A DNA stretch of 33,322 nt from assembly GCF_001194135.2 (NCBI RefSeq), contig NC_068988.1:42011949-42045270 (forward strand), given 5' to 3'. The notes beneath the pieces are model-generated. The model made no database searches and was not told the origin of the DNA. It worked only from the letters and a program-made list of their open reading frames with translations. The position numbers and the translations under genes are program-made. Below, one piece after another: positions 22,340-25,636 of this stretch (position 1 is the stretch's first letter; each line of letters starts with the position of its first letter). Source of the DNA: Octopus bimaculoides (Eukaryota).

Positions 22340-23129
22340 CAGCAAGTCCCAGAATTAGATGAACTGGGAAAAAGCTAAACGCATTAAAACAACTTGCTAG
22401 AAATGCTGTCTTAAATATTCTCACTAATAAATAGAAAATACTCAAAGAGAGCTAACAATGTTGATGTTGACAAAGCTCTTACTCATCAATAGTTAGCAAC
22501 TTCTGGTTTAAAATCAGAAACATAATTGTTTATCGTACCGGCCCAGGGCCAATGCCTATTTACAAGATACTACCAGACCAACATCTTACAGGACGGCCAT
22601 AGCCCAACGTGTCGTGTATGTAAACAACACACTGAAACCATCGATCATTTTGTGCCCATGTGCAGCCTTCTTGCGTCTTCAGACTTTCAGCAGCACAGTA
22701 AATTTAGTGGGTAATTTGCAAGGATCTGGGCCTACCCCATGATAAAAACGGGGAGGAACACAAACCCTCCCACGTGCTTGAAAATTATCATATTTCACAC
22801 CAATAGAATTTTTCTGTTCAAACTCACAGAAACGTAAATGCAAATAGGTCAAACATTATATTGAATGATTTCAGACAAAAACTGTGCCTCCTCATCGATA
22901 TGATTATCCCAGCAGTGAAATATGTATTTCTCAAAATCTATCAAGTATAAAGATCCTGAAATAGAACTTGGCAAAATGTCGAAACTCAAGACTAGAAAAA
23001 TATTTGTTGTCATAGGTGCTCTAGGAGTGATAGCCAAATGAGCTGATTCCAAGAAATCCCAAAATAGAAATTAAAAGTATAGTCCTCATGGGAACTTCTC
23101 ATATCCTACGAAAAATACTGTCTATGTAG
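22340..23129 (+). mobile_element. R4/Dong-like fragment 4 (linker, CCHC, RLE, stop), a different decayed subfamily
   Basis: DVDKALTHQ*LATSGLKSET*LFIVPAQGQCLFTRYY...CRVCKQHTETIDHFVPMCSLLA...CLLIDMIIP...YKDPEIELGKMSKLKTRKIFVVIGALGVI...VLMGTSHILRKILSM* (TAG 23127-23129). Multiple stops and frameshifts. Confidence 0.8.
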
Positions 23130-23905: not shown

Positions 23906-24389
<484 letters not shown>

Positions 24390-24458
24390 NNNNNNNNNNC
24401 AGAAAGAATAAGTTAGAAGTTCAGGTTAATGTTATGAATAGAGTGCCAAATTTTTGTT

Positions 24459-24459
24459 A

Positions 24460-24517
<58 letters not shown>
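24459..24517. repeat. (GTT)n microsatellite about 50 nt upstream of the terminal-exon acceptor
   Basis: Direct reading. Confidence 0.95.
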
Positions 24518-24568: not shown

Positions 24569-25636
24569 ATATATGGAATTACATCGTTTCTTTTCGTGGT
24601 CCTGTCCATTTTGGGTTTCTGCCTGGAAACGCTGCCTCAAGTCCGAGGCCCCACCAACATCACACGCCAATGCAACGGAGAGACTAGCGAAAGTCTGCAA
24701 GTGATGCAGTCCCATGATGCGCTAAACGTCATTGATGTCATCTGTACCATCTTCTTCACACTGGAGTTAATAGCCCGATTTATATTTGCTCCGCAGAAAT
24801 TGAAGTTCGTTCGTTCTTTAATGAATATTATAGACTTACTGGCTCTCGTGCCACTTTACGTACAAGTCATTCTACATTCAACTGATCCAGAATTCTGTTA
24901 TCTAAATGAACGACTTGTGATGGAGATTATGTTTATTTTGCGTATTATTCGCATGTTTCGAATTTTCCATCTTGTCAAACATTACCAAGCGCTAAAAATA
25001 TTAGTTTATGCCATGAAAGCAAGCATTCAGGAACTGCTTATGCTGGCTATATTTATGATTATTGCTATGCTTGTATTTGCTACAATGATCTATTATGCAG
25101 AACGCAAAGATGCAACGAACGCTAGCGATGCGTTCAACACAATCCCTATGGGGTTTTGGTGGGCAATCATCACCATGACAACGGTTGGTTACGGAGATGT
25201 TTATCCGTCTTCCACGATTGGCTATATTGTCGGTGCTGGATGTGCACTCAGTGGAGTGCTACTAGTTGCCCTTACCATCCCTGTCATCTCGAACAATTTC
25301 ACCCTCTTTTACACACACGTTAGATCGCGCTCCAGCGAACGCCGGGTAAGTCGCACATTCCAAGGTGGATCCGAGATTCTCGAACACCACGATCCCACCA
25401 ATAATTTTGATCGTCGCTCGTCCAATTCGTCTGTGGTTCTGGAAACCTTCATGAATGGCACTGTGGCTGTTCACAAAATGAACAATCCGCTATACGCGAC
25501 TCTACCGTATGCCGACCGTACATCAATTTCAGACAATGGTATGGAAGACGACATGGACTCAGACAGAACCATAAGCAGAAATGGTTCTTTTCGAACACTA
25601 GACCTAACTGAGCCCAAACCTGAAACACGTTTATGA
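24569..25636 (+). CDS. Shaw: Shaw/Kv3-family K+ channel, terminal coding exon (S1-S6, pore, C-terminal tail)
   Basis: Acceptor ttatcttttcttttcctAG at 24567-24568. Phase 0 joins in frame with the previous exon (...SRPAM/IYGITSFLFVVLSILGFCLET). Contains S3 NIIDLLALVP, S4 LRIIRMFRIFHLVKHY, pore IPMGFWWAIITMTTVGYGDVYP (TVGYG 25181-25195), S6 GAGCALSGVLLVALTIPVISNNF and stop TGA 25634-25636. The IPxGFWWA and FCLET motifs are Kv3-like. Confidence 0.95.
   Translation: MYGITSFLFVVLSILGFCLETLPQVRGPTNITRQCNGETSESLQVMQSHDALNVIDVICTIFFTLELIARFIFAPQKLKFVRSLMNIIDLLALVPLYVQVILHSTDPEFCYLNERLVMEIMFILRIIRMFRIFHLVKHYQALKILVYAMKASIQELLMLAIFMIIAMLVFATMIYYAERKDATNASDAFNTIPMGFWWAIITMTTVGYGDVYPSSTIGYIVGAGCALSGVLLVALTIPVISNNFTLFYTHVRSRSSERRVSRTFQGGSEILEHHDPTNNFDRRSSNSSVVLETFMNGTVAVHKMNNPLYATLPYADRTSISDNGMEDDMDSDRTISRNGSFRTLDLTEPKPETRL

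What the first reader, a model, noticed from the sequence alone, without database searches (positions are those of the whole stretch)
25253..25300. Degenerate S6 activation gate (PVP->TIP, V478-equivalent->Ser) in an otherwise intact Shaw-type channel: candidate regulatory ('silent') or leak-like subunit
Seen: S6 reads GVLLVALTIPVISNNF, versus Shaker GVLTIALPVPVIVSNF and Kv3 GVLTIAMPVPVIVNNF. The substitutions at Shaker-equivalent positions are T469L, I470V, P473T (ACC 25274-25276), V474I and V478S (TCG 25289-25291). The TVGYG filter, glycine hinge and T1 Zn site are intact and the ORF is uninterrupted. Established: the PXP motif and V478 form the intracellular gate, and gate degeneration marks obligate-heteromeric regulatory subunits (vertebrate Kv5/6/8/9; cnidarian Kv1/3/4 regulatory subunits). 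I470V is the change produced by editing in mammalian Kv1.1. Inference: this may be a molluscan Kv3-family regulatory subunit or a channel with a non-canonical gate. Whether it has been described cannot be determined here.
Basis: partly seen in the sequence, partly recalled or inferred. Interest (0 to 1): 0.72.

Follow-up and report, generated by a model that had tools for sequence, protein, structure and literature searches.

The report
Octopus ortholog of Aplysia aKv5.1 channel
The odd-looking pore gate is real, but it is the fixed hallmark of an old mollusc and annelid potassium-channel lineage whose Aplysia member (aKv5.1) has the identical gate and was published in 1994 as a non-inactivating channel, so it is not a decayed or "silent" subunit.

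Summary
Window 25253-25300 encodes GVLLVALTIPVISNNF, with Thr (ACC 25274-76) at Shaker P473 and Ser (TCG 25289-91) at V478. It lies in the last exon of an Octopus bimaculoides Shaw-family gene.

The "degenerate gate, so silent or regulatory subunit" reading is not supported:
- All 120 closest homologs, from molluscs and annelids, carry L-T-[I/F/V]-P-V-I-S. Thr, Pro and Ser are invariant.
- Against a distant cephalopod transcript, synonymous sites are saturated (pS 0.77), while the S5-S6 region has 2 nonsynonymous differences and S6 has none.
- The window protein groups with Aplysia "noninactivating potassium channel" (aKv5.1, Zhao et al. 1994) at 98% bootstrap. That protein has the identical S6 and a near-identical S4.
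- Vertebrate silent subunits lose the second proline. This protein keeps it.

The gate changes co-occur with six other clade-fixed substitutions, including K5 to His in S4, Gly to Ala in the S4-S5 linker and Leu to Met in S5. This looks like a retuned sensor-gate coupling.

Best reading: a homotetramer-competent, non-inactivating, weakly voltage-dependent "background" K+ channel. It is a new member of a known kind, of modest interest.

The parts
9882..10147 (+). Internal coding exon: C-terminal half of the T1 domain plus the T1-S1 linker (GELHVP...TSRPAM). It starts in phase 1 after the acceptor ...ttctacAG and ends ATG|GTAAGC. The Zn motif is H (9890-92), C (9908-10) and CC (9971-76).
   Evidence: It is identical to P0001 residues 109-197. 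The exon junction RPAM|IYGITSF is continuous in transcript contig L001.
10148..24568 (+). Intron of 14.4 kb (GT...AG). It holds N gaps, microsatellites and retroelement remnants.
24569..25636 (+). Last coding exon: S1 through S6, the C-terminal tail and the stop codon (TGA, 25634-36).
   Evidence: Pfam Ion_trans, E 2.2e-42. (Kv3.1, 256 bits).
24923..24982 (+). S4 voltage sensor, MFILRIIRMFRIFHLVKH. Against Shaker, R1 is Phe, R2-R4 are kept, K5 is His (CAT 24968-70) and R6 is Lys.
   Evidence: His is invariant in the clade and Lys is present in 92% of canonical Kv3.
25181..25195 (+). Selectivity filter TVGYG.
25253..25300 (+). S6 from the hinge Gly to the gate: GVLLVALTIPVISNNF. Thr is at Shaker P473 (25274-76), the second Pro is retained (25280-82) and Ser is at V478 (25289-91).

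Best explanation
The window carries the last two coding exons of the Octopus bimaculoides ortholog of Aplysia aKv5.1. This is a distinct lineage of Shaw-related (Kv3-like) voltage-gated K+ channels, old enough to be shared by molluscs and annelids.

In this lineage the S6 gate hexapeptide is T-[I/F/V]-P-V-I-S instead of P-V-P-V-I-V. That sequence is a fixed, selected feature and not decay.

Most likely mechanism (inferred):
- The retained second proline still provides the S6 bend.
- Loss of the first proline and a small polar Ser at the hydrophobic-seal position weaken the closed gate.
- A reduced-charge S4 (R1 to Phe, K5 to His) and co-fixed changes in the S4-S5 linker and S5 loosen sensor-gate coupling.

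The expected result is a homotetrameric, fast, non-inactivating, weakly voltage-dependent K+ conductance that is partly open near rest and sets resting potential and firing pattern. This matches what is reported for aKv5.1.

Shown here: orthology, invariance of the gate, purifying selection, transcription in cephalopods, and the co-varying signature.

Inferred: the biophysical consequences, and the transfer of the Aplysia phenotype to octopus.
For: - Sequence and gene model.
- Closest solved family by sequence is Kv3.1 (256 bits, against 225 for Kv2.1, 215 for Kv1.3 and 189 for Kv4.2). It is also closest by predicted fold (TMq 0.64).
- All 120 best homologs have L-T-[IFV]-P-V-I-S, and nearly all have RI[IFV]RMFRIFHLVKH in S4.
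- An exhaustive search shows a clear gap between this clade (60-70% identity, more than 340 bits) and everything else (45% identity or less).
- NJ tree: the molluscan clade holding the window protein and Aplysia P0012 has 98% bootstrap, and cephalopods have 100%.
- P0012 is NP_001191593 / Q16976 / AAA62590, 'noninactivating potassium channel', with S6 identical to octopus. PMC2229393 cites aKv5.1 (Zhao et al. 1994) as a Shaker-family candidate for the S-type K+ channel.
- Purifying selection against cephalopod transcript L001: pS 0.77 and pN 0.017 in S1-S6. The S5-S6 region has 56 synonymous and 2 nonsynonymous differences. In S6, 9 of 16 codons differ, all synonymously, including the Thr and Ser codons.
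- Eight clade-fixed differences from canonical Kv3 cluster in S2, S3, S4, the S4-S5 linker, S5 and S6.
Against: - No electrophysiology exists for the octopus protein. Homomeric function is carried over from Aplysia at 68% identity.
- I could not read Zhao et al. 1994 here. Its oocyte result is cited from its title, the database name and my own memory.
- In Shaker, P473A and P473W are non-conducting (PMC2233862). Function without the first proline must therefore depend on context that has not been tested.
- Atypical S6 gates are the most widespread mark of verified regulatory subunits (PMC6279357).
- T1 self-compatibility cannot be read from sequence, and half of T1 is outside the window.
- Deep tree nodes are weakly supported (48-66%).
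Confidence: 0.8

Rival explanations
1. Obligate-heteromeric regulatory ('silent') Shaw-family subunit. An altered gate and T1 self-incompatibility would prevent homotetramers, and the subunit would modulate a canonical PVP Kv3 partner.
For: The gate sequence TIPVIS loses a hinge proline and puts a polar residue at V6, which fits the signature found in 42 of 43 verified regulatory subunits (PMC6279357). Shaker P473A and P473W are non-conducting (PMC2233862). Octopus has a canonical PVP Kv3 (P0286) that could in principle be a partner.
Against: - The gate is invariant in 120 of 120 homologs and under strong purifying selection. Regulatory gates drift and differ between clusters (PMC6279357), and regulatory subunits evolve fast (PMC3519636).
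- The second proline, which is lost in all vertebrate silent subunits (PMC3440756), is retained.
- Aplysia aKv5.1 has the identical S6 and is named for its expressed non-inactivating current.
- Identity to octopus canonical Kv3 is only 37%, which is about the level I recall between separate Kv subfamilies, and those do not co-assemble (Kv1-4 segregate through T1, PMC6279357).
Confidence: 0.07
2. Dual role. The subunit forms homomers but also co-assembles in vivo with other lophotrochozoan Shaw-family paralogs that have non-proline gates, for example the TVP-gate paralog P0155, to diversify currents.
For: Molluscs carry many Shaw-family paralogs with T, S, A, I or V at the first gate position. 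Lottia has 13 Shaw genes and Capitella has 9 (PMC3519636). These clades group together in the NJ tree, with weak support of 53-65%.
Against: There are no data on co-assembly. The paralogs are 45% identical or less. T1 compatibility cannot be judged from sequence (PMC6279357).
Confidence: 0.12
3. Artefact: assembly or sequencing error, or a decaying pseudogene copy.
For: The scaffold is gap-rich, with a 10-N gap and long microsatellites within 470 nt upstream of the exon. The public gene model has a transposon-derived N-terminus.
Against: The O. vulgaris and O. sinensis proteins have an identical S6 and are almost identical overall. Argonauta is 96% identical. An intron-less transcript contig from another cephalopod has the same S6 amino acids with different synonymous codons. 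The reading frame is open and pN/pS is 0.02 in the core.
Confidence: 0.01

Closest known systems
Aplysia californica aKv5.1, 'noninactivating potassium channel' (NP_001191593 / Q16976; Zhao et al. 1994, Neuron 13:1205)
   Same: They share the same molluscan clade at 98% bootstrap and are 68% identical. The S6 (GVLLVALTIPVISNNF) is identical, and S4 through the S4-S5 linker differs at only a few conservative positions. Both have the TVGYG filter and the T1 Zn motif.
   Different: The S1-S2 loop and C-terminal tail differ. The octopus protein is uncharacterised. Gastropods and bivalves have several paralogs per species, whereas only one copy was seen in cephalopods.
Canonical Shaw/Kv3 channels (human Kv3.1 structures 7phh and 8quc; Drosophila-type Shaw; Octopus sinensis Kv3 P0286)
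   Same: This is the best-scoring solved family by both sequence and fold. The architecture matches: T1 with H-x5-C-x20-CC, six transmembrane segments, and the NNF/FxLYY end of S6.
   Different: Identity is only about 35-37%. The gate is TIPVIS against PVPVIV. In S4, K5 is His and R1 is Phe. The linker has Gly to Ala and S5 has Leu to Met. It does not belong to the bilaterian Kv3 orthology group that contains P0286 and the vertebrate KCNC genes.
Electrically silent or regulatory Kv subunits (vertebrate Kv5.1, Kv6, Kv8, Kv9; Nematostella regulatory subunits in Kv1, Kv3 and Kv4)
   Same: They share a non-consensus S6 gate hexapeptide with a lost hinge proline and a polar residue at V6 (PMC6279357).
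   Different: Here the first proline is the one lost, not the second. The sequence is invariant and not drifting. The lineage is not Kv2-related, and its Aplysia member conducts on its own (own knowledge of Zhao et al. 1994). From my own knowledge, vertebrate Kv5.1 (KCNF1) shares only the name with aKv5.1.
Other lophotrochozoan Shaw-family expansions with T, S or A in place of the first gate proline (e.g. Lottia P0129 SVP, Elysia P0131 TVP, Octopus sinensis P0155 TVP, Lingula P0143 TIP, Lineus P0128 AVP)
   Same: They share loss of the first gate proline with the second retained, are Shaw-related, and occur in molluscs, brachiopods and nemerteans.
   Different: They are 45% identical or less. 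Most keep Val at the V478 position. I found no functional data on them.

Membership tests
Shaker-superfamily voltage-gated K+ channel (Kv1-4 type) | Six-transmembrane Ion_trans core with an S4 that has a basic residue at every third position | tested here: met
   Pfam Ion_trans E 2.2e-42. S4 is RIIRMFRIFHLVKH. The AF2 model shows the S1-S6 topology.
Shaker-superfamily voltage-gated K+ channel (Kv1-4 type) | K+ selectivity filter T-V-G-Y-G | tested here: met
   TMTTVGYGD at 25181-25195
Shaker-superfamily voltage-gated K+ channel (Kv1-4 type) | N-terminal T1 (BTB_2) tetramerisation domain | tested here: inconclusive
   Only the C-terminal half is in the window (exon 9882-10147). The N-half exon is absent from the window. 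The orthologs P0002 and P0003 have a complete PF02214 domain.
Shaw / Kv3 subfamily (broad sense) | Closer to Kv3 than to Kv1, Kv2 or Kv4 by sequence and fold | tested here: met
   Kv3.1 scores 256 bits against 225, 215 and 189. Foldseek top hits are all Kv3.1. The NJ node joining it with Kv3 has only 56% support.
Shaw / Kv3 subfamily (broad sense) | T1 Zn2+ site H-x5-C-x20-CC (non-Shaker Kv) | tested here: met
   H4, C10, C31 and C32 of the exon product are at least 90% conserved in the clade.
Shaw / Kv3 subfamily (broad sense) | Consensus S6 gate P-V-P-V-I-V | tested here: not met
   The gate is T-I-P-V-I-S.
Canonical bilaterian Kv3 orthology group (KCNC1-4, Drosophila Shaw) | Groups with KCNC and Shaw orthologs | tested here: not met
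   Octopus has a separate ortholog, P0286, in that group. Identity to it is 37%.
aKv5.1 clade (Aplysia noninactivating K+ channel) | Monophyly with Aplysia aKv5.1 | tested here: met
   98% bootstrap for the molluscan clade, with a score and identity gap to all other clusters.
aKv5.1 clade (Aplysia noninactivating K+ channel) | Signature residues: S6 L-T-x-P-V-I-S, S4 R-I-F-H-L-V-K-H, linker Ala, S5 Met | tested here: met
   All eight signature positions are present in the window protein.
aKv5.1 clade (Aplysia noninactivating K+ channel) | Homomeric non-inactivating, weakly voltage-dependent K+ current | not testable with these tools
   This needs heterologous expression. For Aplysia it is known only from Zhao et al. 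1994, which is not held, and from the citation in PMC2229393.
Electrically silent / regulatory Kv subunits | No functional homotetramers (T1 self-incompatibility) | not testable with these tools
   No T1 sequence signature exists for this (PMC6279357). The Aplysia ortholog is reported to be functional.
Electrically silent / regulatory Kv subunits | Vertebrate KvS: loss of the second PXP proline and Kv2-related ancestry | tested here: not met
   The second Pro is invariant (PMC3440756). Kv3 scores higher than Kv2.
Electrically silent / regulatory Kv subunits | Gate sequence drifting under relaxed selection, differing within and between clusters | tested here: not met
   The gate is invariant in 120 of 120 homologs. 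S6 has 0 nonsynonymous and 9 synonymous codon changes, and pN/pS in the pore is 0.011.

The most novel reading that the evidence does not exclude
The TIPVIS gate, together with S4 K5 to His, the S4-S5 linker Gly to Ala and the S5 Leu to Met change, may be a naturally re-engineered electromechanical coupling. It would have been fixed in lophotrochozoans since before molluscs and annelids split. It would make a T1-containing Kv channel behave as a fast, weakly voltage-dependent background conductance. It would also be a conserved, homotetramer-competent counter-example to the rule that atypical S6 gates mark regulatory subunits. The surrounding, functionally unexplored lophotrochozoan Shaw paralogs with T/S/A-x-P gates could then be a set of gate-tuned channels and not silent subunits.
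Probability: 0.4. Interest if true: 0.45.

Novelty: new member of a known kind. Interest (0 to 1): 0.3.

Why it matters
For annotation: this gene should be read as the cephalopod aKv5.1-type channel. It is neither a generic 'Shaw' nor a silent subunit, and the public O. bimaculoides model has a transposon-derived N-terminus that needs correcting.

For channel biophysics: the clade shows that a Shaker-superfamily channel can keep strong functional constraint without the first gate proline and with a polar residue at the hydrophobic seal. In Shaker itself, substitutions of the first proline abolish conduction. Inferring a 'regulatory' phenotype from an atypical S6 gate alone is therefore unsafe. 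The eight co-fixed positions give a short, testable list of residues for understanding weak voltage dependence and opening near rest.

For cephalopod neurobiology: it is a candidate background conductance that sets resting potential and firing pattern.

Tried and rejected
- Searched the window for the N-terminal T1 exon with the Argonauta and cephalopod N-termini (tblastn). It is not there.
- Tried to fetch the whole octopus and Argonauta loci. The gene ranges (149 kb and 251 kb) were too long to return DNA. Octopus-Argonauta dN/dS could not be computed, so a transcript contig from a more distant cephalopod was used instead. Its synonymous sites are saturated, so only pN/pS is given and not a corrected dN/dS.
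- Zhao et al. 1994 is not in the paper library. Searches for aKv5.1 found only citing papers without functional detail.
- The AlphaFold model (pLDDT 76.6) shows S6 as one continuous DSSP helix. It says nothing about whether the bend at TIP is kept.
- The Rfam scan of the window found nothing.
- The RNA-editing angle (I470V) was rejected. Val is genome-encoded (GTT) here and in the transcript, and the position varies in the clade.
- Deep branching order among Shaw-family clades is unresolved by NJ on 241 columns (supports 13-66%).

Full report
**What is in the window.** The window is AT-rich (35% GC), gap-rich invertebrate genomic DNA full of microsatellites. On the + strand it holds two coding exons of one gene.
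- Exon 9882-10147 follows the acceptor ...ttcttctacAG and ends ATG|GTAAGC. It encodes GELHVPLDVCGAVVKRELDFWEIDEFEIKACCW...TSRPAM. This is the C-terminal half of a T1 domain with the H-x5-C-x20-CC zinc motif, plus the T1-S1 linker.
- After a 14.4-kb intron, exon 24569-25636 follows the acceptor ...ttttcctAG. It encodes S1 through S6, a 106-residue tail and the stop codon.

The joined product is 100% identical to residues 109-552 of NCBI 'potassium voltage-gated channel protein Shaw [Octopus bimaculoides]' (P0001). The exon junction RPAM|IYGITSF is uninterrupted in a 2.2-kb transcript-like contig from another cephalopod (L001).

**The observation.** It holds exactly. Positions 25253-25300 give GVLLVALTIPVISNNF, with ACC at 25274-76 and TCG at 25289-91. 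The HMMER alignment to human Kv3.1 pairs it with GVLTIAMPVPVIVNNF.
- Thr replaces the first proline of P-V-P (Shaker P473).
- The second proline is kept.
- Ser replaces the 'hydrophobic seal' valine (V478).
- TVGYG (25181-95) and the hinge glycine are intact.

Two qualifications apply. First, the N-terminal half of T1 is not in the window. The gene spans about 149 kb in the assembly and 251 kb in Argonauta. The public model fills the N-terminus with a mariner-type HTH_48 segment. Second, the T469L and I470V changes also occur in PVP-bearing molluscan Kv3 or vary inside the clade, so they carry no signal.

**Is the gate degenerate? No.** All 120 best database homologs carry L-T-[I/F/V]-P-V-I-S. 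Thr, the second Pro, Ile, Ser, Asn and Phe are invariant. Named members are cephalopods, gastropods, bivalves and annelids.

An index-free search of 1.84 billion cluster representatives shows a sharp gap. Clade members are 60-70% identical and score above about 340 bits. Everything else is 45% identical or less.

The window CDS was compared with the cephalopod transcript L001:

| Region | Synonymous differences | Nonsynonymous differences | pS | pN | pN/pS |
|---|---|---|---|---|---|
| Whole CDS | 229.2 | 54.8 | 0.77 (saturated) | 0.053 | 0.068 |
| S1-S6 core | 129 | 10 | 0.75 | 0.017 | 0.023 |
| S5-S6 pore | 56 | 2 | 0.71 | 0.008 | 0.011 |

Within the 16 S6 codons, nine differ, all synonymously. 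These include the Thr codon (ACC/ACT) and the Ser codon (TCG/TCC). O. vulgaris and O. sinensis proteins are nearly identical to the window's. This rules out assembly error and relaxed selection.

**What it is.** By sequence the nearest solved family is Kv3.1 (256 bits, against Kv2.1 225, Kv1.3 215 and Kv4.2 189). An AlphaFold model (pLDDT 76.6) also hits Kv3.1 structures first (TMq 0.64).

It is not the octopus Kv3 ortholog, however. Octopus sinensis has a canonical one (P0286, ALPVPVIVNNF, with a full S4 charge set). P0286 came up, together with vertebrate KCNC1-4, among the best hits of a canonical PVP Shaw query, and it is only 37% identical to this lineage.

In an NJ tree (75 sequences, 241 columns, 100 bootstraps) the window protein sits in a molluscan clade with 98% support. 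That clade contains Aplysia californica 'noninactivating potassium channel' (P0012 = NP_001191593 / Q16976 / AAA62590). Cephalopods form a 100% subclade.

P0012 has the identical S6, GVLLVALTIPVISNNF. Its S4 through S4-S5 linker differs only at a few conservative positions. This is aKv5.1 of Zhao et al. [quoted passage not shown] PMC2229393 cites it as a Shaker-family candidate for the S-type K+ channel. I could not read the 1994 paper. That the current was recorded from the cloned subunit expressed alone is my own recollection, consistent with the title and the database name.

**Context.** Loss of the first gate proline is widespread in lophotrochozoan Shaw-family expansions:
- SVP in Lottia
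- TVP in Elysia, Batillaria, Argopecten and Octopus sinensis P0155
- TIP in Lingula
- AVP and TVP in the nemertean Lineus

Jegla et al. 2012 counted 13 Shaw genes in Lottia and 9 in Capitella (PMC3519636). The aKv5.1 clade is the tightest and most conserved of these.

Comparing 120 clade members with 26 canonical Kv3/Shaw representatives gives eight positions fixed in the clade and different from the canonical consensus:

| Window residue | Canonical residue | Location |
|---|---|---|
| D145 | E | S2 (Shaker E283 position) |
| L185 | F | S3 |
| H223 | K | S4 (K5 position) |
| V225 | T | S4 |
| A230 | G | Start of S4-S5 linker |
| M247 | L | Base of S5 |
| T325 | P | S6 (P473) |
| S330 | V | S6 (V478) |

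S4 also has Phe at R1 and Lys at R6. The changes lie along the voltage-sensor-to-gate path, which suggests co-adapted retuning and not decay.

**Against the literature on silent subunits.**
- Labro and Snyders note that all vertebrate silent subunits lack the second PXP proline (PMC3440756). This protein keeps it.
- Pisupati et al. 2018 found atypical PVPVIV sequences in 42 of 43 verified regulatory subunits. They interpret these as drift under relaxed selection, with a different pattern in each cluster. The regulatory phenotype itself comes from T1 self-incompatibility, which has no sequence signature (PMC6279357).
This gate shows the opposite evolutionary behaviour, namely invariance.
- Hackos et al. 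2002 found Shaker P473A and P473W non-conducting, while V478A was functional with a leftward shift of about 11 mV (PMC2233862). A working channel without the first proline must rely on its co-evolved background.

**Most likely mechanism (inferred).** The second proline still bends S6. Ser at the seal position and loss of the first proline destabilise tight closure. A lower-charge S4 and an altered linker and S5 make opening weakly voltage dependent. The result would be a fast, non-inactivating K+ conductance active near rest, as reported for aKv5.1. I put about 0.8 on 'homotetramer-competent aKv5.1-type channel', about 0.07 on an obligate regulatory subunit, and about 0.01 on an artefact. Additional heteromeric roles remain possible.

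**Verdict.** 'Degenerate or silent' is not supported, and 'non-canonical, leak-like gate' is supported by orthology. This is a new (cephalopod) member of a channel class known since 1994. The clade-wide gate signature and its conflict with the 'atypical gate means regulatory subunit' heuristic are worth a note, but they are not a new kind of system.

Noticed in passing
window 1-9881 (upstream of exon 9882-10147) and P0001 residues 1-108: The public O. bimaculoides gene model starts with a mariner-type HTH_48 (PF17906) segment instead of the N-terminal half of T1. The O. vulgaris model is also N-terminally truncated. The true first coding exon is not in the window, and the gene range is about 149 kb (251 kb in Argonauta).
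   Followed up: partly
window 24968-24970 (His223 of the exon product): A histidine occupies the S4 K5 gating-charge position. It is invariant in 120 clade members, while canonical Kv3 has Lys. A titratable residue at this position might make gating pH-sensitive.
   Followed up: partly
window 24096-24517: An (ATT)n array of about 280 bp, a 10-N assembly gap (24390-24399) and a perfect (TGT)19 array lie 50-470 nt upstream of the last exon's splice acceptor.
   Followed up: no
window 1021-1593 (-) and 22526-22714 (+): There are ORF fragments with the zf-RVT domain (zinc-binding region of reverse transcriptases). The first has E 1.6e-7. The second is weak and below Pfam's cut-off. They are probably non-LTR retroelement remnants upstream of and inside the channel gene's intron.
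   Followed up: partly
related proteins P0155, P0286 (Octopus sinensis), P0129, P0131, P0141, P0143, P0128: Molluscs, a brachiopod and a nemertean carry several further Shaw-family clades in which the first gate proline is T, S, A, I or V. Octopus has at least three Shaw-family types: PVP, TVP and TIP..S. I found no functional data on these.
   Followed up: partly
window 24640-24720 (S1-S2 loop, residues ~116-136 of the exon product): The AlphaFold model predicts a beta-hairpin in the S1-S2 loop. The loop carries an N-I-T sequon and a conserved Cys. Confidence here is only moderate.
   Followed up: no
L001 (Logan contig SRR25158133_3541) and cluster members P0386, P0387: The 553-aa cephalopod ortholog recurs on dozens of short intron-less contigs from many sequencing runs (55 and 43 contigs), so the gene is commonly transcribed. 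The species of these runs could not be determined here.
   Followed up: no
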